This document shows positions 2,613 to 32,190 of a DNA stretch of 32,746 nt, one piece after another. The notes beneath the pieces are model-generated. The model worked only from the letters and a program-made list of their open reading frames with translations. It ran no database searches and was not told the DNA's origin. Source of the DNA: Octopus bimaculoides (Eukaryota); contig NC_068983.1 of NCBI RefSeq assembly GCF_001194135.2, positions 24,685,535 to 24,718,280 on the forward strand, read 5' to 3'. The translations under genes were made by a program, and so were the position numbers. Within the stretch, counting starts at the first letter, position 1; each line of letters begins with the position of its first letter.

Positions 2613-3118
2613 AGGGAAAGAAAAGGGATTTTGTAGTTCTCATGTCATTTTTGTAACATCCTTTACAATATAAATATATGTCAGTACCAACAGAGAATAA
2701 AAAAAAACCCTCATGTATTTTAGTTCTCAAAGCATTTACCATTGTGCAAATAATGCATGTGCTGGTGATTTCTTAATGGTAATAGTCATGATGAGATTTG
2801 AATGCCACTTCCCATTCGTGGGCAACTTGACCCTATCGTATAGTAATGTGTGGTCAGTGTGTAAATGGTCAAGCAAGACCTAAAATAAGCCATTATTGTG
2901 GTCGTCATCTGGTTGTGCAATTTGCAACTTTACCATGCCAGTGGGTTTTTAATCACACTGGTCTTTTGCTAGCTGAGATATTTCGTCAGTGCATGCCAAG
3001 ACTGCAGATGATAGTAGTTTGCTTGCTGAACTGATTAATCCTAGCTGCTGACAGTTTATTATCTTCTCATTCGCTCAGCATCTGGTGATGTTTGTCATTG
3101 ACCCACTAAAATTCATTT

Positions 3119-3471
3119 CTTTTCTACTCTAGGCACAAGGTGCGAAATTTTTGGGGTGGAAGGGGCCAGTCGATTAGATCGACCCCAGTACACAACTGGT
3201 ACTTAATTTATTGACCCCGAAGGGATGAAAGGCAAAGTCGACCTCGGCGGAATTTGAACTCAGAACATAAAGACAGACGAAATACCACTAAGCATTATCG
3301 GCCGGTGTGCTAACGTTTCTGCCAGCTCGCTGCCTTTTTTTTGTTTTTTTAACGTTTACAGCGCCTAGGTTTCCCAAGAGGTCACCCATCTAAGTACTAA
3401 CTAGGCTCAATGTTACTTAACTTCGGTGATCAGACGAGAACCGGTGTTTTCAAAGTGATATGGCCATAAAC
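3119..3471 (-). mobile_element. Composite retroposon: 5S + A-rich linker + family C SINE, inserted as one unit
   Basis: Identical direct repeats ACTAAAATTCATTT at 3105-3118 and 3470-3483 flank the composite (the first 2 nt of the right copy overlap the 5S 5' end). Linker about 3335-3353; SINE part 3119-3334. Confidence 0.8.
3354..3471 (-). rRNA. Full-length 5S rRNA-like copy, most likely a retroposed pseudogene or SINE head
   Basis: Reverse complement reads GTTTATGGCCATATCACTTTGAAAACACCGGTTCTCGTCTGATCACCGAAGTTAAGTAACATTGAGCCTAGTTAGTACTTAGATGGGTGACCTCTTGGGAAACCTAGGCGCTGTAAAC. It is 118 nt, has the terminal helix GTTTATGGC/GCTGTAAAC, and has box A-like (AGTTAAG) and box C-like (GATGGGTGACC) motifs. 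It is followed by an A-rich tract rather than an oligo-T terminator. Confidence 0.9.
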
Positions 3472-3723
3472 TAAAATTCATTTGCTAAAATAGTTCATAT
3501 TCACCGTGTTGCGTCCCATGATTTCAATGAAACCCATCTCAGGTTGTTACATGCTATTTAGCCCATAACTGGGACCCTAACAGATGCTACTACTCTGAGT
3601 CAAAGTAGACATGGGAACAATAATGGCTAAAAGGTGGTTCTACACACCTCAAAACCCTAGAATTCCTCAACCAGAGCCCTATTAATGGATGCAGTGTAAA
3701 GTTATACCTGCATATACATTAGT

Positions 3724-3980
3724 GGAGGCATGTGGTTTAGTGGCTAGGGTGTTGGACTCATGATCGTAAGATTGTGGTTTCGATTCCTGGACTAGGTGAC
3801 GCGTTGTGTTCTTGAGCAAAACACTTCATTTCACATTGCTTCAGTTCACTCAGCTGGCAAAAAATGAGTAACCCTGCGATGGACCAGTGTCCCATCCAGG
3901 TGGGGAATATATAGACCACGAAACTGGGAAACCAGCTCTTATGAATCGGTGACACTCAAGAAGGAAATTTTACCTTTACT
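3724..3980 (+). mobile_element. SINE family A variant (same head, different 3' body)
   Basis: TGGTTTAGTGGCTAG...GTTTCGATTCC head and CAGTTCACTCAGCTG core. Confidence 0.8.
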
Positions 3981-5019: not shown

Positions 5020-5029
5020 NNNNNNNNNN

Positions 5030-5523: not shown

Positions 5524-6299
5524 GTATAATCATCATTTAACATCCATGTTCCATGCTGGCTTGTGTTATATGATGATGATGTTGATATGATACGTACGTC
5601 TTCCATGCATGGGTAGGACGGTTAACAGGAGCCAGCCAGGTAGAAGACTACTTCAGGCTATATATAGTTCACAGATGAAATCCAGAGCTTCCCAGTGTAG
5701 AAGACAGTTAGTAGTGCCAAAAAGATTCAAACTTAAAAGTTACCTCTCTCTCTCTGAATATATATANNNNNNNNNNNNNNNNNNNNNNNNNNNNNNNNNN
5801 NNNNNNNNNNNNNNNNNNNNNNNNNNNNNNNNNNNNNNNNNNNNNNNNNNNNNNNNNNNNNNNNNNNNNNNNNNNNNNNNNNNNNNNNNNNNNNNNNNNN
5901 NNNNNNNNNNNNNNNNNNNNNNNNNNNNNNNNNNNNNNNNNNNNNNNNNNNNNNNNNNNNNNNNNNNNNNNNNNNATATATATATATATATATACACACA
6001 CACTCCTATGTCCTAGTTTTACACTAACAGACAGAAAATTAGTTGTATTGATCTTTGAGGGATTCTGCTCTAGCTGACAATAGAAACGAAACAAGACGAC
6101 ATTTCACACTTGCTGTCTTTTTGTTTTGACTACACAGCCTATGCTTTTATTGATGAATGAGGGAGTGAATCTAATTGAATTCTTCTTCTTGGTGCTAGTG
6201 TTTTTTTGATATTTGAACTCTCTACTGATTCCTAGTTGTTCTTCTCCTTGATTATATAAAAAGTTGCTTCACCAGATAAGAAACTGCTTGTACATCTAA

Positions 6300-8345: not shown

Positions 8346-8767
8346 ACATGTTTATGTGTTCACCTATATATATATATATATATATNNNNNNNNNNNNNNN
8401 NNNNNNNNNNNNNNNNNNNNNNNNNNNNNNNNNNNNNNNNNNNNNNNNNNNNNNNNNNNNNNNNNNNNNNNNNNNNNNNNNNNNNNNNNNNNNNNNNNNN
8501 NNNNNNNNNNNNNNNNNNNNNNNNNNNNNNNNNNNNNNNNNNNNNNNNNNNNNNNNNNNNNNNNNNNNNNNNNNNNNNNNNNNNNNNNNNNNNNNNNNNN
8601 NNNNNNNNNNNNNNNNNNNNNNNNNNNNNNNNNNNNNNNNNNNNNNNNNNNNNNNNNNNNNNNNNNNNNNNNNNNNNNNNNNNNNNNNNNNNNNNNNNNN
8701 NNNNNNNNNNNNNNNNNNNNNNNNNNNNNNNNNNNNNNNNNNNNNNNNNNNNNNNNNNNNNNNNNNN

Positions 8768-9717: not shown

Positions 9718-9908
9718 GCATCAACTCATTCCATAGGGTAAGTCGATTGCATCGACCCCAATGCGTAACTGGTACTTATTTAATCTACCCCAAAAGGATG
9801 AAAGGCAAAGTCGACGACGGCGATATTTGAACTCTGAACGTAACGGCAGACGAAATACCACTAAGCATTTCACCCAGCGTGCTAACAATTCTGCCAGTTC
9901 ACCGCCCT
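9718..9908 (-). mobile_element. SINE family C
   Basis: Reverse complement of GGCGGTGAACTGGCAGAATTGTTAGCAC...GAGTTCAAAT. Confidence 0.85.
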
Positions 9909-10601
9909 TACCCAATATCATGTATTTGATATTTGGTACACAAAAATTGTAGAAGCCAGGCAGGTAGCTGGTATCTGTAATTCAAGGCTCCAACCTTGTC
10001 ACACTGTGTTAGGTTGATGCTGCCTGAGAGTTATGTTAAGGGCATAGATATCTATAGCATCCTCAGTGACAAACACACTAATGCAATGTGCTTGATAGTT
10101 CATTTGATCAAAGAACTGAAAATTCATGGTTGGANNNNNNNNNNNNNNNNNNNNNNNNNNNNNNNNNNNNNNNNNNNNNNNNNNNNNNNNNNNNNNNNNN
10201 NNNNNNNNNNNNNNNNNNNNNNNNNNNNNNNNNNNNNNNNNNNNNNNNNNNNNNNNNNNNNNNNNNNNNNNNNNNNNNNNNNNNNNNNNNNNNNNNNNNN
10301 NNNNNNNNNNNNNNNNNNNNNNNNNNNNNNNNNNNNNNNNNNNNNNNNNNNNNNNNNNNNNNNNNNNNNNNNNNNNNNNNNNNNNNNNNNNNNNNNNNNN
10401 NNNNNNNNNNNNNNNNNNNNNNNNNNNNNNNNNNNNNNNNNNNNNNNNNNNNNNNNNNNNNNNNNNNNNNNNNNNNNNNNNNNNNNNNNNNNNNNNNNNN
10501 NNNNNNNNNNNNNNNNNNNNNNNNNNNNNNNNNNNNNNNNNNNNNNNNNNNNNNNNNNNNNNNNNNNNNNNNNNNNNNNNNNNNNNNNNNNNNNNNNNNN
10601 N

Positions 10602-12651: not shown

Positions 12652-12795
12652 ACTGGCACATGGCTCAGTGGTCAAAGCATTGGGTTCGCAGTCATAAGGT
12701 TGTGAGTTTGATTCCTGAACTGGGTTGTATATTGTGTTCTTAAGCAAGACACTTATTTCATGTTGCTCCAGTTCACTCAGCTGTTGAAATGAGCT
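12652..12795 (+). mobile_element. SINE family A, 3' truncated
   Basis: TGGCTCAGTGG...GTTTGATTCC...CAGTTCACTCAGCTG. Confidence 0.75.
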
Positions 12796-13670: not shown

Positions 13671-14082
13671 CACACACACGTGCACAAGCACACAATCATG
13701 CTTAGGTGTCCACACATATATCATAACAAATGCAATCTCATGCACATATATATCCAAACACATACAGGAATACATACACCAGCCTACGAATTACATTGTA
13801 TTTGTTGCTTCTTTGTAGAAATGTTTGCTATTAGCTGTTGTTATTCATATGATTATGTCTCATTAACCTTTTGTCTAAAGTANNNNNNNNNNNNNNNNNN
13901 NNNNNNNNNNNNNNNNNNNNNNNNNNNNNNNNNNNNNNNNNNNNNNNNNNNNNNNNNNNNNNNNNNNNNNNNNNNNNNNNNNNNNNNNNNNNNNNNNNNN
14001 NNNNNNNNNNNNNNNNNNNNNNNNNNNNNNNNNNNNNNNNNNNNNNNNNNNNNNNNNNNNNNNNNNNNNNNNNNNNNNNNNN

Positions 14083-14487: not shown

Positions 14488-14961
14488 GTGGAATGCAAGC
14501 GAGCTGAACCTCTTGGACGTATGAAAGGCGACCAAAATAGTGGTCAGGCATTACCATCGTCACTAGATCAACTTCAGCATCAGTTGATGCTGCCAAAAGA
14601 CCAGGTCCCAGACGGACTGTCGGCGTGGAGGCCCACTGCTGCTGTACTTACTGACAATGGAAATATCGGTGCTAAACCTGGCTTTGAAATGGTCAATGGC
14701 ACCAGCACTGCTATTGGAGATGCTGCAGGTTGTAGTAACATTGATGCAAATGGTGTGCGTAGCAACCCAGCTGGTGTTTGTGGTGCTGCTCTGCCTTACG
14801 TTGCAAATCCCCCGGCTAGTAACGGTGTGAAGGTCTCCATGTACCATCAACTTGTTAGCTATCCTGGGATTTACTCTGTTAGTCAGCAGCAGCAGTTTCA
14901 GCAACAGTTGCAACAACAACAACAACAACAGCAGCAGCAGCAACAACAGCAGTTGCAACAA

Positions 14962-14992
<31 letters not shown>

Positions 14993-15235
14993 TGCAACAA
15001 CAACAACAACAACAACAGCCACAGCAACCACAGCAACAATCGCCACAACAGCAATCTTTAATGCCAGTTCCGCCGCCACAATCAGTTGTTCCAACAACAA
15101 ACCAACCTATCCAGTCAGATGGTTACGGACAACAGACTGCTCCTGTATATGTTGCACAATCGGTACAATCTAGGCAACAGCCCCCGCAAGGCTACCTTAC
15201 CTCTTGGGGACAGCCACCCCCTTCTGTACCACCAG
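14488..15235 (+). CDS. Internal coding exon of a Musashi/DAZAP1/Hrb27C(hrp48)-like RRM RNA-binding protein: last strand of an RRM followed by a Q/P-rich low-complexity region
   Basis: Acceptor ttatttctacAG at 14486-14487. Exon opens VECKRAEP, which resembles the RRM2 end of DAZAP1 (VEVKRAEP) and Musashi (VECKKAQP). Open frame of 249 codons plus 1 nt. Donor CAG|GTATGT at 15235/15236 (phase 1). Family call rests on only about 8 residues, so no symbol is given. Confidence 0.85.
14884..15050 (+). repeat. Coding CAG/CAA repeat (polyglutamine interrupted by Leu/Phe/Pro)
   Basis: Encodes Q4-F-Q3-L-Q14-L-Q12-L-Q8-PQQPQQQSPQQQ in the exon frame. Confidence 0.95.
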
Positions 15236-15459
15236 GTATGTAAGAGTACTTTGAATTTATGTTTTAATGATTGGTTAATAAAAGACATTACTTTGGTACA
15301 CTTGTTTTCATATCACCTCTGCGTTGGCAGGCGAATTCAGTTGTAGATCAAGGGAAATTGATGCCAAACATAGTTCATAATTACATATAAAGATAAAGTA
15401 TTATTTCCAAGTCCTATGGACTCATAAGGGTCAGTTTCCTGGTTTCTGTTATGTCGTTG

Positions 15460-16139: not shown

Positions 16140-16480
16140 ACATGACTCAGTGGTTAGAATGTTGGGCTCACACTCATAAGGTAGTGAGTTCGATTCCCGG
16201 CCTGGGCTGTGTCGTATTCTTCAGCAAGACATTTTATTTCACAATGCTCCAGTTCACCCAGCTGTAGAAATGAGTTGTGATGTCAATGATGCCAAGCTGT
16301 ATCAGCCTTTGCCTTTCCCTTGGATAACATCAGTGAGGTGGAGAGAGGTGGAGGCTGGTATGTATGGATCACTTGTGGTCTTCCATAAACCACAATGTTT
16401 GGACTTGTGCCTTGGAAGGTAACTTTCTAAGTGCAATCCCATGGTCATTCATGACTGAAGGGAACCTTTAACCTTCACTT
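16140..16480 (+). mobile_element. SINE family A
   Basis: TGACTCAGTGGTTAG...GTTCGATTCC; full body. Confidence 0.85.
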
Positions 16481-16559
16481 TCTCATGGTTTTATATTTAA
16501 AACAAAATGTTAAATTGCAAATTTAAAGATTCATAAATTATGTTAAAACTTACCTTCAA

Positions 16560-16670
16560 CATGTCACCGGCATGGATGCCTTTAATGTGTCACCTGCATG
16601 AGTGCCTTTAATGTGTCACCAGCACAGGTGCCGTTAACGTGTCACTAGCATGGATGCCTTTAATGTGTCA
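16560..16670. repeat. About 25 bp minisatellite, 4-5 copies
   Basis: Unit about TTTAATGTGTCACCAGCATGGATGCC; resembles the internal repeat of family D. Confidence 0.8.
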
Positions 16671-16671
16671 T

Positions 16672-16806
16672 ATATTTACCCCTTAATGGGATGCCAGTCC
16701 ATTGCAGGATTACTCATTTTTGCCAGCTGAGTGGAATGATGCAACATAAAATGAAGTGTTTTGCTTAAGAACACAATGCAGTTCAGGGATTGAAACCGCA
16801 ACCTTA
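16672..16806 (-). mobile_element. SINE family A fragment, truncated at the TIR unit
   Basis: Reverse complement of the core seen at 3780-3900; it stops at the TA at 16805-16806. Confidence 0.65.
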
Positions 16807-17840
16807 CAGTGACATGTACAACTCATCCCATGAGATAAAAGTACCTTTCTTTAGAACATTAGACCAGTGTCCCACCTATGTAAAACACATTTCTGACAAA
16901 AGAGCCTCTAAGTGTTTGCTCAAAATGCTAGAAATAGCAACAGCAAAATGTACTACTCACTGTTGTAAAATTCTAAGTGTCACTATGTTATGGTGCCTCT
17001 TTACAGCTAAATAGATTTGGCCATTGAAAGTTATATCTACAGAGTGTCCACAAGGTCTGGGTACATGGAGTAAATAAAATCATAACATAAACAATTAAAT
17101 ATAAGAAATAATAATTTCTTAAAGTATGTGTTAATCCCCATGTACCCAGACTTTGTGGATACCCTGTATAAACATAATTCAGTGATATGATGTGAACTGC
17201 TGACTTCTTGGGTGATGTCCTTCCAGCTCAGCCATCCATGCTCTCTTAGAGGCTACCTAGAAAGTTAAGGGGTGAACTTAAATTAACCCCATATACCCTA
17301 ACCAGTAGGGCAGATTCCTCCACTCATAATTACATATAGCAAATGAAAATGTTTTCGTAGACCACCACCTTTGATTTTGTGAAATATGAAAATTTGAATA
17401 AGTTATATGCTGTGCTGAGAGCTGAAGGAATGCCAGGACACTCATTTCTCTATGGCATAGAGATTCATCTAAACGTTCTCAAAATAATAACTTCACCTGA
17501 CTCTCATTGTCAGATCGCCTGTTCAGTTTTATTAACCGGAAAAGTAATTAACATCGGTTAGGTTTGTTAACTTAGGAAATTACTGTACTCTGTTTCAGAG
17601 TTGCAATTTTACTTTGGTCATTTTTGGCAAAGATCTTGCAACACATAGTCCAGATCTAGCTTATTGAATCATTAAATTTTACAACAGTGGGTAGTATATT
17701 TATTTGCTGCTATTTCTAGCATTTTGAGCAAACACTTAGAGGCTTTTTTGTCAGAAATGTGTTTTACATAGGTGGGATACTAGTTTAATGTTCTAAAGAA
17801 GGATACCTTTATCCCATGAGATGAGTTGTACATGTCACTG
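16807..17840. mobile_element. Non-autonomous Tc1/mariner-like unit bounded by about 166 bp TIRs with TA TSD
   Basis: TA|CAGTGACATGTACAACTCAT... (16805-16972) is the reverse complement of about 17674-17842 (...ATGAGTTGTACATGTCACTG|TA). Confidence 0.8.
17040..17166. mobile_element. Tc1/mariner-type MITE (about 127 bp, about 30 bp TIRs, TA TSD)
   Basis: TA|CAGAGTGTCCACAAGGTCTGGGTACATGG ... CCATGTACCCAGACTTTGTGGATACCCTG|TA. The empty site is visible in the paralogous copy near 17945-17955. Confidence 0.9.
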
Positions 17841-19074: not shown

Positions 19075-19497
19075 CAAACTTTGGTAACCCACCTTCTGGT
19101 CTGCCTGAATATACTTTTCAAGGACCAATCCAGGACCAAGTAAGCTCTCAGGTTTACAATCAGTGGAATGACAGAGCCCAGCAAGGCCTGCCTATCACAA
19201 TGCCTTCTCAACAGCAACAACACCAGCAGCACCAACAGCAACAACCACAACAGCAGCAGCAACAACCACAGCAACAGCATCATCAACAGCAGCACCAACA
19301 ACAACAGCTTACTCAAAGCAATCAGGGTCAACTGACTACTACACCACTACCTCCAGCTGTTGCAAGTAGCTATCAAGGATATTCACAGATGCCTCTCTTA
19401 GGACAAACCGTTCCTCCACCTCCTAACTATGGAATTCCACAGCAAACTCTGTCACAGTCACCAGCCTTACCTCCTACTGTACAGTATGCCAATTACA
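19075..19497 (+). CDS. Next coding exon of the same gene (Q/P/Y-rich low-complexity region)
   Basis: Pyrimidine tract ttgtttcttcattttcAG (19073-19074). A phase-1 join to the previous exon gives G|CA AAC TTT GGT... (ANFGNPPSGLPEY...), in frame with ORF 19200-19505. Donor ACA|GTAAGT at 19497/19498. Length 423 nt, symmetric phase 1-1. Confidence 0.85.
19208..19308 (+). repeat. Second coding Gln-rich CAA/CAG repeat (with His/Pro interruptions)
   Basis: Encodes QQQQHQQHQQQQPQQQQQQPQQQHHQQQHQQQQ in the exon frame. Confidence 0.9.
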
Positions 19498-19837
19498 GTA
19501 AGTAGAACTCTGCCAATCATTTAGCACTGAACTGCTTTGAGGTGTGCATTAAAAATGAACCTGATAGCTATGGGTTATGAATTTTATCACTCAGCTTGCA
19601 AAGACCTGTTGGGGCAAGTGAGATCGAAACTGAACAAAATTTGATGACTGGCACCCGTGCCAGTGGAGTGCTAACAGCACCGTCCGAGTGGGATCACTGT
19701 CAGAGCAACAGTTTCGCTCCCATGTCGGTGGCACGTAAATGATGATGATGCATTAGGGATTAGTGTTTTGAAAGGTGGGGGAGGAGGTACTAGCTAGGGA
19801 AAGGCGAGTATGGAAGTTGAAATATGTTGCAGCCTGT

Positions 19838-20048
19838 GGCAGAATCATAAGCATGCTGGGTAAAATGCTTAGCAGCATTTCGTCCATCTTTATGCTCTGA
19901 GTTCAAATTCTGCTGAGGTCAACTTTGCCTTTCATCCTTTTGGAGTTGATGAAATAAGTATGAGTTGAGCACTGGTGGGTGGGGAGTCAATATAGTCGAG
20001 TAGCCTCTTCCTCCAAATTTCAGTTCTTCTGTCTATAGTAGAAAGGAT
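19838..20048 (+). mobile_element. SINE family C with a long (ATT/ATC)n tail to about 20195
   Basis: TGGCAGAATC...GAGTTCAAATTCTGC...TAGTAGAAAGGATTATC. Confidence 0.8.
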
Positions 20049-20050
20049 TA

Positions 20051-20111
<61 letters not shown>

Positions 20112-20125
20112 CACAATCATTATTA

Positions 20126-20159
<34 letters not shown>

Positions 20160-20161
20160 CA

Positions 20162-20196
<35 letters not shown>

Positions 20197-20892
20197 TAGT
20201 TTTATTTTTATAACGTGCTTTCACNNNNNNNNNNNNNNNNNNNNNNNNNNNNNNNNNNNNNNNNNNNNNNNNNNNNNNNNNNNNNNNNNNNNNNNNNNNN
20301 NNNNNNNNNNNNNNNNNNNNNNNNNNNNNNNNNNNNNNNNNNNNNNNNNNNNNNNNNNNNNNNNNNNNNNNNNNNNNNNNNNNNNNNNNNNNNNNNNNNN
20401 NNNNNNNNNNNNNNNNNNNNNNNNNNNNNNNNNNNNNNNNNNNNNNNNNNNNNNNNNNNNNNNNNNNNNNNNNNNNNNNNNNNNNNNNNNNNNNNNNNNN
20501 NNNNNNNNNNNNNNNNNNNNNNNNNNNNNNNNNNNNNNNNNNNNNNNNNNNNNNNNNNNNNNNNNNNNNNNNNNNNNNNNNNNNNNNNNNNNNNNNNNNN
20601 NNNNNNNNNNNNNNNNNNNNNNNNNNNNNNNNNNNNNNNNNNNNNNNNNNNNNNNNNNNNNNNNNNNNNNNNNNNNNNNNNNNNNNNNNNNNNNNNNNNN
20701 NNNNNNNNNNNNNNNNNNNNNNNNNNNNNNNNNNNNNNNNNNNNNNNNNNNNNNNNNNNNNNNNNNNNNNNNNNNNNNNNNNNNNNNNNNNNNNNNNNNN
20801 NNNNNNNNNNNNNNNNNNNNNNNNNNNNNNNNNNNNNNNNNNNNNNNNNNNNNNNNNNNNNNNNNNNNNNNNNNNNNNNNNNNNNNNNNNNN

Positions 20893-20977
<85 letters not shown>

Positions 20978-21220
20978 GGCAGTGAGCTGGCAGAATCGTT
21001 AGCACACCAGGCGAAATGCTTAGCGGTATTTCGTCTGTCTTTACCTTCTGAGTTCAAATTCCGCCAAGGTTGACTTTGACTTTCATCCTTTCATGGTCGA
21101 TAAATGAAGTATCAGTTGAGCACTGAGGTTGATGTAATCAACTAGTCTCCCCCGCAAAAAAATTTCAGGCCTTGTGCCTATAGTAGAAAGGATTATTATT
21201 GTAGTAGTAGTAGTAGTAGT
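20978..21220 (+). mobile_element. SINE family C
   Basis: GGCAGTGAGCTGGCAGAATCGTTAGCAC...TAGTAGAAAGGATTATT. Confidence 0.9.
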
Positions 21221-21306: not shown

Positions 21307-21520
21307 CCTTTCTACTATAGGTACTAGGCCTGAAATTTTGAGGGAGGGAGTTAGTCGACTACATTGACCCCATTGTTCAACTCATACTTATTTCAATGAC
21401 CCAGACAGGATGAAAGGTGAAGTTGACCTCAGTGGAATTTGAACCCAGAATGTAAAGACAGTCAAAATGCCACTAACCATTTTGTCCAGCTTGCTAATGA
21501 TTCTGCCAGCTTACCTCCTT
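21307..21520 (-). mobile_element. SINE family C, inverted relative to 20978-21220
   Basis: CCTTTCTACTATAGG...TGCTAATGATTCTGCCAGCT. Confidence 0.85.
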
Positions 21521-21536
21521 AGTAGTAGTAGGAGTG

Positions 21537-21592
<56 letters not shown>

Positions 21593-21808
21593 GGTTTTAA
21601 ATTTTGGCACAAAGCCAGCAATTTTGGGGGAGGAGGTAGGTAGCTGGTTTCATCGACCCCAGTGGTCAACTGGTACTTGTCTTATTGAGCCCAAAAGGGT
21701 GAAAGACAAAGTTGACTTCGATGGAATTTGAACTCAGAACACAGAGATAGAGGAAATACTGCTAAGCATTTCGCCTAGCTTGCTAACAGCACTACCAGCT
21801 CACTGCTT

Positions 21809-23574: not shown

Positions 23575-23888
23575 TTTCATCATCATCATCATCGTTTAAC
23601 GTCCGCTTTCCATGCTAGCATGGGTTGGACAGTTTGACTGAGGACTGGTGAAACCGGATGGCAACACCAGGCTCCAATCTGATTTGGCACAGTTTCTACA
23701 GCTGGATGCCCTTCCTAACACCAACCACTCAGAGAGTGTAGTGGGTGCTTTTACGTGTCACCTGCACGAAGGCCAGTCAGGCGGTACTGGCAACGGCCAT
23801 GCTCAAAATGGTGCATTTTATGTGCCACCTGCACAAGAGCCAGTCCAGGGGCACTGGCAACGATCTTGCTCGAAAATCCTACGAAGCC
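23575..23888 (-). mobile_element. Retroposon family D
   Basis: Colinear with 10602-10965; flanked by an exact 30 bp direct repeat (23519-23548, 23891-23920). Confidence 0.9.
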
Positions 23889-23975: not shown

Positions 23976-25548
23976 TGTGTCCCACATTATTAGGCAAATC
24001 AACTTTCTCTCAATAAACAAATGTATATTCGTACAAAACCAGTTATTTTCCCACTGACTGTTGGCAACATCTCTCTGCACACATTCTGTTAAAATAAATC
24101 GGATCAGTGCAGATGCTAGCAAATGACAGCCATTTTTGTGATTGGGCAACATTTTCACCATCACAAATTATTAGGCAAGTAATAACAAAAATGATAATTG
24201 TGTCAGAACAAATATTTATTTAATTCAACAGTAAAGGTTTAACAAAAAAATTATTCATAAAGGACTTAATGGTAAACATAATAATACATTCGAATGAGAA
24301 TAATCATAGGATTATGATGTCATACGGCTGTTTGATATATGGTCCTCCTCATGCAATAACCTTCCTTATGTGCTGATCCATTGAATTTATCAAGGTGATG
24401 ATATCTTCTTGTGTCATGCTTTGAGCAGCATCTACAATAGCATCCCAGAGGGAAACTTTACTTGAAAACTGCCATCCATCTTGGTAAACGCACTGCTTCA
24501 GGAAACTCCACAGGTTCTCGATAAGGTTTAAGTCAGGGGAACAAGGTGGCTTCTCCATCAAACGACCTCCAGAGAAGCTTATTTGTTGCAAGTATTCCTT
24601 AGAATTCTTCGCTGCATGAGACAGGGCATCATCTTGCATGAAAGCTTTTGCCTTTTGAACCACGGTTGGAAATTGTCCTTTAAGAAGGTAACATATGCTT
24701 TTGATATCATCTTAATGCCATCTAGGACTTCCCATGGCCTGACCATCATACCACCAATGATGCCAGCCCAAAACATGACACCACCTCCTCCCTGTTGGTG
24801 TCTCAAATGATGAGGACGATTCCTGATGATTGATACCCAACCTTTACTCCAGCCATCAGGTCCATCAAGGGTAGCATGGCATTCGTCAGTGAACAGAACT
24901 ATTGAAAAGTCTATCTTCGTGTACTCTTCTGCCCATTTCAGTCTCTTCTGCTTATGAACAACCTTCAGTGGGGTGGGGGGGCTTTGCAACAGGTTTAATA
25001 TTCCTGGCTACCTGCTTCAAGAGGTGACACCTAGTAGTCTTCAATACATCTTTCCTGTCACAATGTTTGAAGATTTCATACTTGTCAGACACGGGTTCTG
25101 CACAGTTTCTCTTTTCACACTTGACAAAGTATGATTCGAAGCAGCCCTCGACTCACTCTTATCTGCCCTCGACCGAACAGAAATAGGCAATTGCACAAAT
25201 TTCTTCACTGCTCAGTGATCTTTTCCCAGTATTTTTGATATTTCTATGTTTGTTTTTCATTTCCCAAGCTCTGACACGGTGATAGACTTCTCGTTTGAGA
25301 TAAGATCACGTTTCTGACCCATAATGACCCTTAATTGGGCACTTGCTTAATAATTTGGGACAGCAGAAATGTTGCTGCTACACAATAATGGCTGCCGCTT
25401 GTTTCTGTCTGCGCAGATCCGATTTATTTTAACAGAATTTATGCAGATTGGTGTTACCAGCTGTAAGTGGGAAAACAACTGGTTTTGAAAACGAATATTC
25501 ATTTGTCTATTGAGAGAAGGTTGATTTGCCTAATAATGTGGGACACAA
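23976..25548 (-). mobile_element. Decayed full-length (about 1.57 kb) Tc1-like DNA transposon, DD37E (TRT-like), with about 200 bp IR/DR-type TIRs
   Basis: Imperfect inverted repeats at about 23976-24180 and 25341-25548 enclose a broken transposase frame. Both ends sit in (TG)/(CA) microsatellites, so the TA TSD cannot be resolved. Confidence 0.9.
24330..25322 (-). pseudogene. Tc1-family DD37E transposase pseudogene
   Basis: ATG at 25322 gives MGQKRDLISNEKS... (HTH-like N-terminus with stops), then VLFTDECHATLDGPDGW, QQGGGGVMFWAGI, and MQDDALSH...PPCSPDLNLIENLW. There are 37 residues between the second D and the E. Premature stops and frameshifts are present. Confidence 0.9.
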
Positions 25549-25614: not shown

Positions 25615-27379
25615 TATGTATACACGCACACATGCACAAATTAGCCTAATGCGGTGATGAGGATATCTCAATGTGGTTGTTTGACCAGCTAGAAATAATA
25701 GCCAAATCTCTCTCTAATCATACTTTACATCTTGAAAATAAAGGGAAGGATTTGTTGGAAAACATAGACCTAGACACAGTATGTTGGGGCAATGGAAGCT
25801 TGGAATGGTTTAGCAGGAATTCCTTTGAGACAGCATTGCTTGATAAACAACACCACCAACAAGAAGAGCAGCAACAGCTAATGATATAATCACTGCATCT
25901 AAATAATTTATGAAGTTGCAGGTAATTGCAATTTTAAGTGTATGAGATATATTGGTTAAGAGTATAAGGTGGTAGGTAACTCACCTCATAGTTATAAGTT
26001 CAGACCTTATAACAGTCATGCTGTGCACTTCATTAAAAAGAAACAAGGATGCTTGCTCTAGCTTGATGGAACAGATAGAACTACAGACCCCTTCCCCCCT
26101 GCTCTACTTCTTCATAATTATGTAGTTAGAAGCGCGAAGGGCATCCTACTTTTAAAATATTGTTGCGACAAATAAATTATGTGAGCAGGGAATGAAAAAG
26201 AAAATAGTAAAAGAGTTTAAAAAAGAAGCATTTATTAAAATCTGAAGAGTTTAAATATTTTATTTCATGTGATAGTTAGAAACCCATAAATAGCATGGTT
26301 GTTGTTTGAATAGAAAATGAATACTTTGCTGGATTTTCTAAAAGGCTCTGTTACAGTTGTTATAATCAGATAAATCACTTAACACACAGTGCTGATTTTC
26401 TTAATGGCTGAGAGCAAAACAGCTGCTTGATGCCTGCACAGAAGAATCTATAGAAGAATCTTAGAAATCAGCAATCTAAGAATCCTTAATTTGAGATACA
26501 CAAGCTATCTTTTCTTCATCCACGTCCATGGGAAAAAAAACCTTCAGCTGTTTTGGTAAAGAAAAGACTCATTCACCAACACACTCAAAACTGCCATGTA
26601 GTTGGTTTTTCATGCCAGAATTATTTCTCAAATCTCCCTCTGACTACACCCACCTCTCCATTGCTACCACGACAGTCTGTTTTGAAAAACAAACTTAAGT
26701 GAATTCAGACCAGTTTTCCNNNNNNNNNNNNNNNNNNNNNNNNNNNNNNNNNNNNNNNNNNNNNNNNNNNNNNNNNNNNNNNNNNNNNNNNNNNNNNNNN
26801 NNNNNNNNNNNNNNNNNNNNNNNNNNNNNNNNNNNNNNNNNNNNNNNNNNNNNNNNNNNNNNNNNNNNNNNNNNNNNNNNNNNNNNNNNNNNNNNNNNNN
26901 NNNNNNNNNNNNNNNNNNNNNNNNNNNNNNNNNNNNNNNNNNNNNNNNNNNNNNNNNNNNNNNNNNNNNNNNNNNNNNNNNNNNNNNNNNNNNNNNNNNN
27001 NNNNNNNNNNNNNNNNNNNNNNNNNNNNNNNNNNNNNNNNNNNNNNNNNNNNNNNNNNNNNNNNNNNNNNNNNNNNNNNNNNNNNNNNNNNNNNNNNNNN
27101 NNNNNNNNNNNNNNNNNNNNNNNNNNNNNNNNNNNNNNNNNNNNNNNNNNNNNNNNNNNNNNNNNNNNNNNNNNNNNNNNNNNNNNNNNNNNNNNNNNNN
27201 NNNNNNNNNNNNNNNNNNNNNNNNNNNNNNNNNNNNNNNNNNNNNNNNNNNNNNNNNNNNNNNNNNNNNNNNNNNNNNNNNNNNNNNNNNNNNNNNNNNN
27301 NNNNNNNNNNNNNNNNNNNNNNNNNNNNNNNNNNNNNNNNNNNNNNNNNNNNNNNNNNNNNATACATACTTATATACGA

Positions 27380-28442: not shown

Positions 28443-28835
28443 AGCGGTGAGCTGGCAGAATTGTTAGCACACTGGGCAAAATGCTTAACTGTATTTCAGC
28501 CATCACTATGTTCTGAGTTCAAATTCCACCATGGTTGACTTTGCCTTTCCTCCTTTCGGGGTTGATAAATTAAGTACCAGTTGATTACAGGGGTCAGTGT
28601 AATCGACTACCCGCTTCCCCAAATTTCAGGCCGCCTTGTGCCTAGAGTAGAAAGGATTATAATTAAAGGGGGTGAGTTGGCAGAGTTATTAGCATTCTGT
28701 TTCGTGGCATTTCGTCTATTTTACGTTCTAAGTTCAAATTTCAGCAAGGTTGACTTTGCCTTTTATTCTCCTCAAGGGTTGATAAAATAACACTGGGGTT
28801 GATGTATTTGTCTTACCCCTCCCCCAAAATTTGAA
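28443..28835 (+). mobile_element. Two tandem SINE family C copies (about 28443-28665 and 28667-28835)
   Basis: Two heads, GCGGTGAGCTGGCAGAA and GGGGTGAGTTGGCAGAG. Confidence 0.85.
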
Positions 28836-28934: not shown

Positions 28935-29876
28935 NNNNNNNNNNNNNNNNNNNNNNNNNNNNNNNNNNNNNNNNNNNNNNNNNNNNNNNNNNNNNNNNNN
29001 NNNNNNNNNNNNNNNNNNNNNNNNNNNNNNNNNNNNNNNNNNNNNNNNNNNNNNNNNNNNNNNNNNNNNNNNNNNNNNNNNNNNNNNNNNNNNNNNNNNN
29101 NNNNNNNNNNNNNNNNNNNNNNNNNNNNNNNNNNNNNNNNNNNNNNNNNNNNNNNNNNNNNNNNNNNNNNNNNNNNNNNNNNNNNNNNNNNNNNNNNNNN
29201 NNNNNNNNNNNNNNNNNNNNNNNNNNNNNNNNNNNNNNNNNNNNNNNNNNNNNNNNNNNNNNNNNNNNNNNNNNNNNNNNNNNNNNNNNNNNNNNNNNNN
29301 NNNNNNNNNNNNNNNNNNNNNNNNNNNNNNNNNNNNNNNNNNNNNNNNNNNNNNNNNNNNNNNNNNNNNNNNNNNNNNNNNNNNNNNNNNNNNNNNNNNN
29401 NNNNNNNNNNNNNNNNNNNNNNNNNNNNNNNNNNNNNNNNNNNNNNNNNNNNNNNNNNNNNNNNNNNNNNNNNNNNNNNNNNNNNNNNNNNNNNNNNNNN
29501 NNNNNNNNNNNNNNNNNNNNNNNNNNNNNNNNNNNNNNNNNNNNNNNNNNNNNNNNNNNNNNNNNNNNNNNNNNNNNNNNNNNNNNNNNNNNNNNNNNNN
29601 NNNNNNNNNNNNNNNNNNNNNNNNNNNNNNNNNNNNNNNNNNNNNNNNNNNNNNNNNNNNNNNNNNNNNNNNNNNNNNNNNNNNNNNNNNNNNNNNNNNN
29701 NNNNNNNNNNNNNNNNNNNNNNNNNNNNNNNNNNNNNNNNNNNNNNNNNNNNNNNNNNNNNNNNNNNNNNNNNNNNNNNNNNNNNNNNNNNNNNNNNNNN
29801 NNNNNNNNNNNNNNNNNNNNNNNNNNNNNNNNNNNNNNNNNNNNNNNNNNNNNNNNNNNNNNNNNNNNNNNNNNNN

Positions 29877-29962: not shown

Positions 29963-30180
29963 GGCGGCAAGCTGGCGGAATCATTAGCATACCGGGCCAA
30001 ATGCTTAGCAGTATTTCTCCTGTCACTATGTTCTGAGTTCAAATTCTGCCAAGGTCCACTTTTCCTTTAATCCTTTGGGGGTTGATAAATTAAGTACCAG
30101 TGAAACACTGGGGTTGATGTGATTGACTGTCCCCCTCCCACCAAATCCAGGCCTCGTGCCTTTAGTAGAAAGGATTATTA
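29962..30180 (+). mobile_element. SINE family C
   Basis: GGCGGCAAGCTGGCGGAATC...TAGTAGAAAGGATT(ATT)n. Confidence 0.85.
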
Positions 30181-32044: not shown

Positions 32045-32190
32045 AGCCACTACTCATTGTTGTCAGCTGAGTGGATTGGAGCAACATGAAATAAAGTGTC
32101 TTGCTCAAGGACACAACATGCCACCAGGTATTGAACTCATGACTTTACGATTGTGAGCCGAATGCCCTAACCACTAAGCCACGCACCTTC
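32045..32190 (-). mobile_element. SINE family A (head and core)
   Basis: Reverse complement GAAGGTGCGTGGCTTAGTGGTTAGG...GAGTTCAATACC. Confidence 0.8.

What the first reader, a model, noticed from the sequence alone, without database searches (positions are those of the whole stretch)
3105..3483. 5S rRNA-SINE chimera retrotransposed as a single unit (one TSD flanks both parts)
Seen: minus strand = complete 118 nt 5S copy, then GTT plus an A-rich linker, then a complete family C SINE. The same 14-mer ACTAAAATTCATTT flanks the whole unit (3105-3118, 3470-3483). No oligo-T terminator follows the 5S. The other family C copies whose heads are visible in the window start at GGCGG/GGCAG-like motifs with no 5S. 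Established: 5S-headed SINEs (SINE3 type) exist, and small RNA-retroposon chimeras form by template switching or RNA ligation. Inference: this is either a one-off chimera or a member of an unannotated dimeric 5S+SINE family driven by the 5S internal promoter.
Basis: partly seen in the sequence, partly recalled or inferred. Interest (0 to 1): 0.72.

Follow-up and report, generated by a model that had tools for sequence, protein, structure and literature searches.

The report
5S rRNA copy fused to SINE
A full-length 5S rRNA retrocopy and a full-length SINE, joined by a short A-rich linker, share one perfect 14-bp target-site duplication, so they most likely entered this site together; composite retrocopies like this are a known kind and no public data reachable here could show how common this one is.

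Summary
On the minus strand the order is:
- 14-bp repeat (3483-3470)
- complete 5S rRNA (3471-3353; Rfam 101.6 bits, model 1-120)
- TT
- A7CA8 linker (3350-3335)
- full-length copy of the window's abundant SINE (3334-3119)
- the same 14-mer (3118-3105)

The 14-mer occurs only at these two places (0.03 expected). Neither part has its own duplication: any separate SINE duplication is at most 3 bp.

My estimates:
- One-piece LINE-mediated insertion of a 5S-A-linker-SINE composite: about 0.6. Within that, about 0.33 for a copy of a multi-copy composite element and 0.27 for a one-off template switch or ligation.
- SINE inserted later into the A-tail of an older 5S retrocopy: about 0.3. This stays a serious rival because this SINE family habitually lands behind tails.

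No collection contained this genome, so junction copy number and the orthologous empty site could not be tested. A 2026 Octopus vulgaris annotation already lists four "5S" SINE families (9.8 Mb).

Verdict: a real feature of a known kind, of modest interest.

The parts
3470..3483 (.). Target-site duplication, copy at the 5' end of the element (minus-strand AAATGAATTTTAGT). Its last two bases, GT, overlap 5S nucleotides 1-2.
   Evidence: exact 14-mer, two copies in the window, 0.03 expected.
3353..3471 (-). Full-length 5S rRNA retrocopy, 119 nt, GC 44.5%. Of 34 model base pairs, 32 are standard. The two broken pairs are 17:61 and 18:60.
   Evidence: RF00001, 101.6 bits, model 1-120; pair count; MFE -29.3 kcal/mol, z = -0.6.
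3351..3352 (-). TT, read as the residual 3' U residues of a Pol III 5S transcript. It is not a terminator of four or more T.
3335..3350 (-). A-rich linker, A7CA8. The last one or two A may be the first bases of the SINE. I read it as an oligo(A) tail of the 5S part.
   Evidence: the heads of other copies start AAGGC or AAAGC.
3119..3334 (-). Full-length copy of the window's abundant SINE (GGCAGCGAG...GTAGAAAAG). It is 9.0% diverged from the window consensus and keeps 12 CpG. It has no (ATT)n tail.
3105..3118 (.). Target-site duplication, copy at the 3' end of the element.
3108..3111 (-). First run of four T downstream of 5S +1 (offset 361-364), lying inside the 3' duplication. It is the only terminator-like site a Pol III transcript started at the 5S would meet.

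Best explanation
The 365-bp unit (5S, TT, A-rich linker, full-length tail-less SINE) was inserted here in one target-primed reverse-transcription event by a LINE enzyme. That event made the single 12-14 bp target-site duplication.

The A-rich linker is the oligo(A) tail of the 5S part. The composite therefore has the "monomer, A-linker, monomer" layout of dimeric SINEs such as Alu.

Two routes could have produced the composite template, and I cannot separate them here:

1. **Master-locus route (about 0.33).** At a master locus the SINE sat behind the A-tail of a 5S retrocopy. Pol III started at the 5S internal promoter and read through, because no run of four T lies inside the unit. This would make the unit a member of a 5S-headed composite SINE lineage.
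2. **One-off route (about 0.27).** A reverse transcriptase copied a SINE RNA to its 5' end and then jumped onto, or had been supplied with a ligated, oligoadenylated 5S RNA.

What is shown: the anatomy, the duplication, the lack of secondary duplications and the absence of internal terminators.

What is inferred: the single event, the tail origin of the linker and the choice of route.

This copy itself is probably a dead end. It has no LINE-recognisable tail, and retroposed 5S promoters usually lack their upstream signals.
For: **The duplication**
- A perfect 14-mer lies at both outer ends and nowhere else in the window (0.03 expected). The chance at a fixed position is about 3e-8.
- There is no secondary duplication for the SINE alone or the 5S alone. 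An independent SINE insertion would need a duplication of 3 bp or less.
- Copy 28449-28653 of the same family shows a duplication of about 9-12 bp, AAAGRGGGT.

**The two parts**
- The 5S runs from nucleotides 1-2 to its 3' UU, as expected for a copy of an RNA.
- The immediate flanks are unique in the window, and no assembly gap lies nearer than 5020. This argues against misassembly.

**Transcribability**
- There is no TTTT between 5S +1 and the 3' duplication.
- Every highly conserved Rfam position in the box A and box C regions is retained.

**Relative age**
- The 5S has 2 broken pairs, plus 2 G.U pairs (6:113, 21:57) that I read, against typical metazoan 5S recalled from memory, as products of decay.
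- In a rough model (my assumption that about 65% of changes break a pair), seeing two or fewer broken pairs becomes unlikely above 15% divergence.
- The SINE part is 9.0% diverged from the window consensus. The two ages are therefore compatible.

**Literature**
- Composite 5S plus tRNA-SINE heads are attributed to a switch from a SINE to 5S rRNA (PMC4824008; PMC4758252; HaSE3, PMC3272025).
- A small-RNA-SINE chimera flanked by 12-bp repeats is known (PMC2104539).
- Polyadenylated mature 5S RNA exists in yeast (PMC11115967).
- O. vulgaris has 4 annotated "5S" SINE families covering 9.83 Mb, 0.35% of the genome. That coverage predicts about 0.3 copy per window of this size.
Against: - Classical template-switch or ligation chimeras are fused directly, and their 3' part is usually 5'-truncated and keeps its tail (PMC2104539; PMC13174262). 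Here there is a 14-16 nt linker, a full-length SINE and no tail.
- Human 5S/LINE-1 chimeras are mostly antisense and truncated.
- The missing (ATT)n tail is unexplained by either route if the usual tail-dependent LINE did the work.
- Only one copy is visible in the window, and none of the eight other SINE copies has a 5S.
- I could not see the published "5S" consensus sequences. They may have a different body, may be inflated by cross-matching, or may partly be 5S rDNA arrays: the "recently active" 5S class is 7 insertions of about 6 kb each.
- The age comparison is weak without the species' own 5S sequence.
Confidence: 0.6

Rival explanations
1. Two separate insertions at this locus. First, a 5S retrocopy with an A-tail was inserted and made the 14-bp duplication. 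Later, a SINE landed exactly at the junction between the A-tail and the 3' duplication, with a duplication of 3 bp or less. This could have been a near-blunt or endonuclease-independent event, which would also explain the missing tail.
For: - The A-rich stretch sits exactly where the tail of a 5S retrocopy would be.
- This SINE family habitually sits head-to-tail directly behind the microsatellite tail of an earlier copy: 19837-20044 then 20979-21189; 21606-21806 then 21309-21511; 28449-28653 then 28698-28766.
- In such nests the outer duplication seems to flank both elements.
- Endonuclease-independent insertions typically lack both the duplication and the tail (my own knowledge), and both are missing for the SINE here.
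- Law and Burns stress that sequential and chimeric insertions can only be separated by comparative alignment (PMC13174262).
Against: - The 3' side has only the AAA that is also present in the 5' copy of the 14-mer. The SINE's own duplication would therefore be 0-3 bp, against about 9-12 bp in copy 28449.
- The break must fall at one exact position.
- An A-run is not the (TAA)n-type target that the other copies use.
- The 5S shows no sign of being clearly older than the SINE.
Confidence: 0.3
2. An artefact or a DNA-level event: misassembly across a repeat, or capture of unrelated cDNA fragments during repair of a double-strand break.
For: The window is a gapped draft assembly with eight runs of N. 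SINEs are frequent points of misassembly.
Against: - The unit lies in 1.5 kb of gap-free sequence.
- Both flanks are unique, and they carry the same 14-mer precisely at the element ends. A misjoin or break-repair capture would not produce that.
Confidence: 0.04
3. A functional or variant 5S rRNA gene that merely sits next to a SINE.
For: The Rfam score is high and 32 of 34 pairs are standard.
Against: - There is no terminator of four or more T; TT is followed by an A-run.
- It is a single copy outside any tandem array.
- Two helix pairs are broken.
- GC is 44.5%, and the fold is no more stable than shuffled sequence, z = -0.6.
- The 5' boundary coincides with a target-site duplication.
Confidence: 0.01

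Closest known systems
Chimeric retrocopies made during LINE reverse transcription or by prior RNA ligation: U6/L1, 5S/L1 and Alu/L1 in mammals; WEIRD-Mg-SINE and the tripartite chimera in Magnaporthe (PMC2104539, PMC13174262).
   Same: A full-length small Pol III RNA sits at the 5' end and a retroposon copy at the 3' end, in the same orientation. One duplication of 10-20 bp surrounds the whole; the Magnaporthe examples have 12- and 14-bp repeats.
   Different: - Those parts are fused directly; here TT plus a 14-16 nt A-rich linker lies between them.
- Their 3' part is usually 5'-truncated and keeps its tail; here it is full length and has no tail.
- Human 5S/L1 chimeras are mostly antisense and truncated.
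Composite SINE families with a 5S head and a tRNA-SINE part: the Deu-SINE subgroup including AmnSINE1 (Nishihara 2006, as cited in PMC4824008 and PMC4758252), HaSE3 in Lepidoptera (PMC3272025), and the fruit-bat MEG families (listed in PMC10946416).
   Same: A 5S sequence lies 5' of a tRNA-type SINE, in the same orientation. The proposed origin is a template switch from SINE RNA to 5S rRNA, with the 5S internal promoter as driver.
   Different: - In those families the tRNA head is partial or lost, and there is no A-linker.
- They are defined by many copies.
- Here both modules are complete, a linker is present, and only one copy is known to me.
Alu-type dimeric SINEs: two monomers joined by the A-rich tail of the left monomer (my own knowledge; SINEBase defines complex SINEs, PMC3531059).
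   Same: The layout is monomer, A-rich linker, monomer. The linker is most simply the tail of the 5' monomer.
   Different: The monomers here are unrelated (a 5S and a tRNA-type SINE). Multi-copy status is unknown, and there is no 3' tail.
The "5S" SINE class in the 2026 Octopus vulgaris repeat annotation: 4 families, 9.83 Mb (PMC13282606).
   Same: It is a 5S-containing interspersed repeat class in the presumed host genus. Its coverage fits finding about one copy per 100 kb.
   Different: Part of that class may be 5S rDNA arrays.

Membership tests
Chimeric retrocopy (LINE template switch or RNA ligation) | One target-site duplication of 7-20 bp around the whole composite | tested here: met
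   A perfect 14-mer lies at 3105-3118 and 3470-3483.
Chimeric retrocopy (LINE template switch or RNA ligation) | The 5' part is a full-length small Pol III RNA in the same orientation as the 3' part | tested here: met
   The 5S covers model positions 1-120 on the minus strand, and the SINE is on the minus strand.
Chimeric retrocopy (LINE template switch or RNA ligation) | The parts are fused directly to each other | tested here: not met
   TT plus A7CA8 lies between them. Non-templated addition by the R2 enzyme is 3-4 nt and mostly A on the cDNA, which would read as T on this strand (PMC8857657).
Chimeric retrocopy (LINE template switch or RNA ligation) | The 3' part ends in the retroposon's normal tail, next to the 3' duplication | tested here: not met
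   The unit ends GTAGAAAAG and then the duplication follows. There is no (ATT)n, unlike six of the eight other copies.
Chimeric retrocopy (LINE template switch or RNA ligation) | Both parts appear together in related species | not testable with these tools
   No related genome is reachable.
5S-headed SINE family (SINE3 or composite; SINEBase criteria, PMC3531059) | The head is at least 60% identical to 5S rRNA over at least 60 nt | tested here: met
   Full-length match to RF00001, 101.6 bits.
5S-headed SINE family (SINE3 or composite; SINEBase criteria, PMC3531059) | At least 100 interspersed copies with the same modules | not testable with these tools
   There is one copy in the window and no host genome in any collection. 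Published class-level counts exist, but their sequences are not visible to me.
5S-headed SINE family (SINE3 or composite; SINEBase criteria, PMC3531059) | Substitutions shared with a source element and not with the cellular 5S | not testable with these tools
   No host 5S rDNA sequence is available. The paper PMC326244 is not held.
5S-headed SINE family (SINE3 or composite; SINEBase criteria, PMC3531059) | Intact box A, IE and box C, and Pol III transcription | tested here: inconclusive
   All highly conserved Rfam positions in those regions are retained, and no internal TTTT is present. No transcription data exist, and retroposed type 1 promoters often lack upstream signals (PMC3272025).
5S-headed SINE family (SINE3 or composite; SINEBase criteria, PMC3531059) | A 3' tail usable by a partner LINE | tested here: not met
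   This copy has no repeat tail and no A-tail.
Nested independent insertions | The inner or later element has its own target-site duplication | tested here: not met
   The best word shared by the SINE's two flanks is 5 nt and is not at the junctions. The maximum possible duplication is the AAA.
Functional 5S rRNA gene | A terminator of four or more T after the gene, and a tandem-array context | tested here: not met
   TT is followed by an A-run, and this is the only 5S in the window.

The most novel reading that the evidence does not exclude
The unit is a member of a cephalopod dimeric SINE caught at an early stage. It would have a complete 5S monomer with a type 1 promoter, the monomer's A-tail as linker, and a complete tRNA-type SINE with its own type 2 promoter, amplified as one element. 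This would be the intermediate that the "5S takes over the promoter" model for AmnSINE1 and HaSE3 predicts. A 2024 review table lists no 5S-derived SINE from molluscs (PMC10946416).
Probability: 0.3. Interest if true: 0.5.

Novelty: new member of a known kind. Interest (0 to 1): 0.3.

Why it matters
If it entered as one piece, the locus is a clean invertebrate example of how small-RNA heads get attached to SINEs. That is the step thought to create new SINE families.

Here both modules and the joining A-tract are still intact. In principle one could read from it how the join was made: a tail-mediated dimer or a direct template switch.

If many copies share the junction, it would document a 5S-plus-SINE dimer family in a genome whose SINE load is unusually large. 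If it is a nest of two insertions, it is an ordinary by-product of a SINE family that targets tails.

Tried and rejected
**Searches that found nothing**
1. A gapped pattern spanning 5S box C, the SINE head and SINE box B found nothing in the metagenome contigs. The control pattern for the SINE alone also found nothing in metagenome, prokaryote-genome or viral contigs. These negatives therefore say nothing about copy number.
2. I translated the junction and SINE in one frame, with X at the stops, and searched the protein collection. This was meant to catch ORFs called on host contigs. Only two candidates shared words, and none scored.
3. An exact look-up of the 33-aa junction ORF and of the 251-aa exon-like ORF found nothing on record. 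A homology search with the exon-like ORF, meant to reach orthologous loci, also found nothing.
4. I tried to obtain a cephalopod 5S reference and the primary papers (PMC326244, PMC1484453, PMC169886). None is held. The age test therefore relied on a reference-free count of base pairs.

**Ideas rejected or left open**
5. The linker as non-templated addition by the reverse transcriptase: rejected. That addition is 3-4 nt and mostly A on the cDNA strand.
6. tRNA ancestry of the SINE: not demonstrated. ARAGORN and Rfam give no tRNA hit, even at E up to 10 around the unit and E up to 1 for the whole window. [quoted passage not shown]
7. A functional 5S gene, and misassembly: both rejected (see rivals).

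Full report
**What is there.** I read the region on the minus strand. In order it contains:
- AAATGAATTTTAGT (3483-3470)
- a 5S rRNA sequence (3471-3353)
- TT (3352-3351)
- AAAAAAACAAAAAAAA (3350-3335)
- a 216-nt SINE running from GGCAGCGAG to GTAGAAAAG (3334-3119)
- AAATGAATTTTAGT again (3118-3105)

Rfam finds exactly one 5S in the window, at these coordinates. It scores 101.6 bits against a gathering score of 38 and covers model positions 1-120 without truncation. A permissive scan of the whole window finds no second 5S, not even a fragment.

The 14-mer occurs only at these two places, and shuffles predict 0.03 occurrences. The chance of this word at a fixed position is about 3e-8. The last two bases of the 14-mer are also 5S nucleotides 1-2. 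The duplication is therefore 12-14 bp, with a 2-nt microhomology at the 5' junction.

**The SINE.** BLAST of the SINE part against the window finds eight other copies:
- 9741-9900 (-)
- 19837-20044 (+)
- 20979-21189 (+)
- 21309-21511 (-)
- 21606-21806 (-)
- 28449-28653 (+)
- 28698-28766 (a partial copy)
- 29964-30171 (+)

In the alignment, the copy in the finding covers every consensus position.

It is 9.0% diverged from the window consensus. It keeps 12 CpG, more than all but one of the others, so it looks like one of the younger copies. None of the others has a 5S in front.

The others start AAGGC or AAAGC, so the last one or two A of the linker may belong to the SINE. ARAGORN and Rfam do not recognise a tRNA in it, so I do not claim tRNA ancestry as tested.

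Six of the eight other copies carry a trinucleotide-repeat tail after AGAAAGG. It is (ATT)n or a derivative such as (GTA)n or (ACT)n. Several copies sit head-to-tail directly behind the tail of an upstream copy.

This pattern fits a partner LINE that integrates into TAA-type microsatellites. It is also in line with the large and recently active Dong-R4 fraction reported for Octopus vulgaris. That Dong/R4 elements target such repeats is my own knowledge.

The copy in the finding has no such tail. GTAGAAAAG abuts the duplication, and the target is a unique A/T-rich site. No explanation I considered accounts for this well.

**One event or two.** I looked for a separate duplication for each part. 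The best word shared by the SINE's 5' and 3' flanks is a 5-mer away from the junctions, and for the 5S it is a 4-mer.

Suppose the SINE had entered later, into the A-tail of an existing 5S retrocopy. Its own duplication could then be at most the AAA that is also present in the upstream copy of the 14-mer. The break would also have had to fall at one exact position. Copy 28449-28653 of the same family shows a duplication of about 9-12 bp, AAAGRGGGT.

This favours a single event, but it does not exclude the nest. The family's habit of landing right behind tails makes a tail a likely target. An endonuclease-independent insertion would lack both the duplication and the tail (my own knowledge). Law and Burns make the same point: sequential and chimeric insertions are only separable by comparative alignment (PMC13174262).

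**Relative age of the two parts.** I had no 5S sequence from the host, so I counted base pairs on the Rfam structure.
- Of 34 pairs, 28 are Watson-Crick, 4 are G.U and 2 are broken (17:61 C.A and 18:60 U.C).
- Two of the G.U pairs (6:113 and 21:57) look like products of decay. This judgement rests on typical metazoan 5S sequences recalled from memory.
- In a rough model, in which I assume that about 65% of changes break a pair, seeing two or fewer broken pairs becomes unlikely above about 15% divergence (P = 0.04).
- It is quite compatible with the SINE's 9% (P = 0.24).

The sequence has a GC content of 44.5% and folds no better than shuffled sequence (-29.3 kcal/mol, z = -0.6). It is a decaying copy and not a working gene. 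The ages are compatible with co-insertion, but the test is weak.

**The linker.** Classical chimeric retrocopies are direct fusions of a small RNA to a 5'-truncated retroposon (PMC2104539). Here a 14-16 nt A-tract intervenes, and the SINE is full length.

Non-templated addition by a non-LTR reverse transcriptase is 3-4 nt and mostly A on the cDNA strand, which would read as T here (PMC8857657). That cannot be the source. The simplest reading is an oligo(A) tail on the 5S part. It could have been added to the RNA, since polyadenylated mature 5S is documented in yeast (PMC11115967). Or it could be the tail of a 5S retrocopy at a source locus.

The layout is then that of a dimeric SINE whose linker is the left monomer's tail, as in Alu (my own knowledge). 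No TTTT occurs between 5S +1 and the 3' duplication. A Pol III transcript starting at the 5S could therefore run through the whole unit.

All highly conserved Rfam positions in the box A and box C regions are retained. Retroposed type 1 promoters are nonetheless expected to be weak (PMC3272025).

**Family or one-off.** I could not test this. The gapped junction pattern and a SINE-only control both found nothing in the metagenome contigs, and the SINE-only control found nothing in the prokaryote-genome or viral contigs either. The protein collection holds no ORFs from this SINE. Exact look-ups failed.

The literature does bear on the question. A 2026 annotation of O. vulgaris lists a SINE class \"5S\" with 4 families and 9,831,953 bp. 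At 0.35% of the genome, that predicts roughly 0.3 copy in a window of this size. A unique chimera would turn up in a random window with a probability near 1e-5.

This raises the family reading, and it equally raises the nest reading if the class is a simple 5S plus A-tail element. There are caveats:
- I cannot see the consensus sequences.
- A shared body could inflate the coverage.
- The \"recently active\" 5S entry is 7 insertions of about 6 kb each, which look like arrays.
- I cannot confirm the host species.

**Comparison with known kinds.** The unit works like the chimeric retrocopies of mammals and Magnaporthe, and like the composite 5S plus tRNA-SINE families (AmnSINE1 group, HaSE3, MEG). 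Their origin is attributed to a switch from a SINE RNA to 5S rRNA.

It fails two descriptive features of the classical chimeras: direct fusion, and a tailed, truncated 3' part. The defining feature of a SINE family, at least 100 copies (PMC3531059), could not be tested. I therefore file it as a new member of a known kind and not as a demonstrated family.

**Verdict.** My estimates are:
- one-piece insertion: about 0.6, of which about 0.33 is a copy of a multi-copy composite and 0.27 a one-off switch or ligation
- nested independent insertions: about 0.3
- artefact, another DNA-level event, or a functional 5S gene next to a SINE: about 0.05
- unassigned: about 0.05

Interest is modest (0.3). 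A genome-wide junction count and the orthologous locus would settle both open questions.

Noticed in passing
window 19837-21189 (+), 21309-21806 (-), 28449-28766 (+), 29964-30171 (+): SINE copies sit head-to-tail, each directly behind the trinucleotide-repeat tail of the copy upstream. The repeats are long arrays: (ATT)49, (TTA)28, (TAG)94 and (CAT)29. This suggests a partner LINE that integrates into TAA-type microsatellites, possibly Dong/R4-like, and tails that expand and change motif.
   Followed up: partly
window 3730-3910, with similar stretches at 592-640, 1395-1472, 12692-12783, 16149-16275, 16670-16807 and 32051-32182: A second interspersed repeat family, 74-83% identical between copies, begins about 250 bp from the unit. 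It is unrelated to the 5S or the SINE.
   Followed up: no
window 24349-24989 (-): Two overlapping ORFs in different frames. One has a Pfam DDE_3 match (E = 6e-7), indicating a frameshifted remnant of a Tc1/mariner-type transposase.
   Followed up: partly
window 14488-15243 (+) and 19200-19505 (+): Long glutamine- and proline-rich ORFs that look like exons. No homologue was found in the protein collection for the non-repetitive first 132 aa. There is only a sub-threshold, probably low-complexity, TFIIA match.
   Followed up: partly
window 5020-5029, 5767-5975, 8386-8767, 10135-10601, 13883-14082, 20225-20892, 26720-27361, 28935-29876: Eight assembly gaps (3520 N in total). Where I looked (20225-20892, 28935-29876, 13883-14082) they sit inside or next to micro- or dinucleotide repeats. 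Repeat lengths and some SINE neighbourhoods in this window are therefore not fully resolved.
   Followed up: no
window 16553-16670 and 23744-23877: Tandem repeats with periods of 26 bp (4.5 copies) and 67 bp (2 copies), of unknown origin.
   Followed up: no
window 9741-9900 (-): This SINE copy diverges from the family consensus after about position 166. It ends ...AATAGAAAAATGATAC without an (ATT)n tail. It is a second tail-less or variant 3' end in the window.
   Followed up: no
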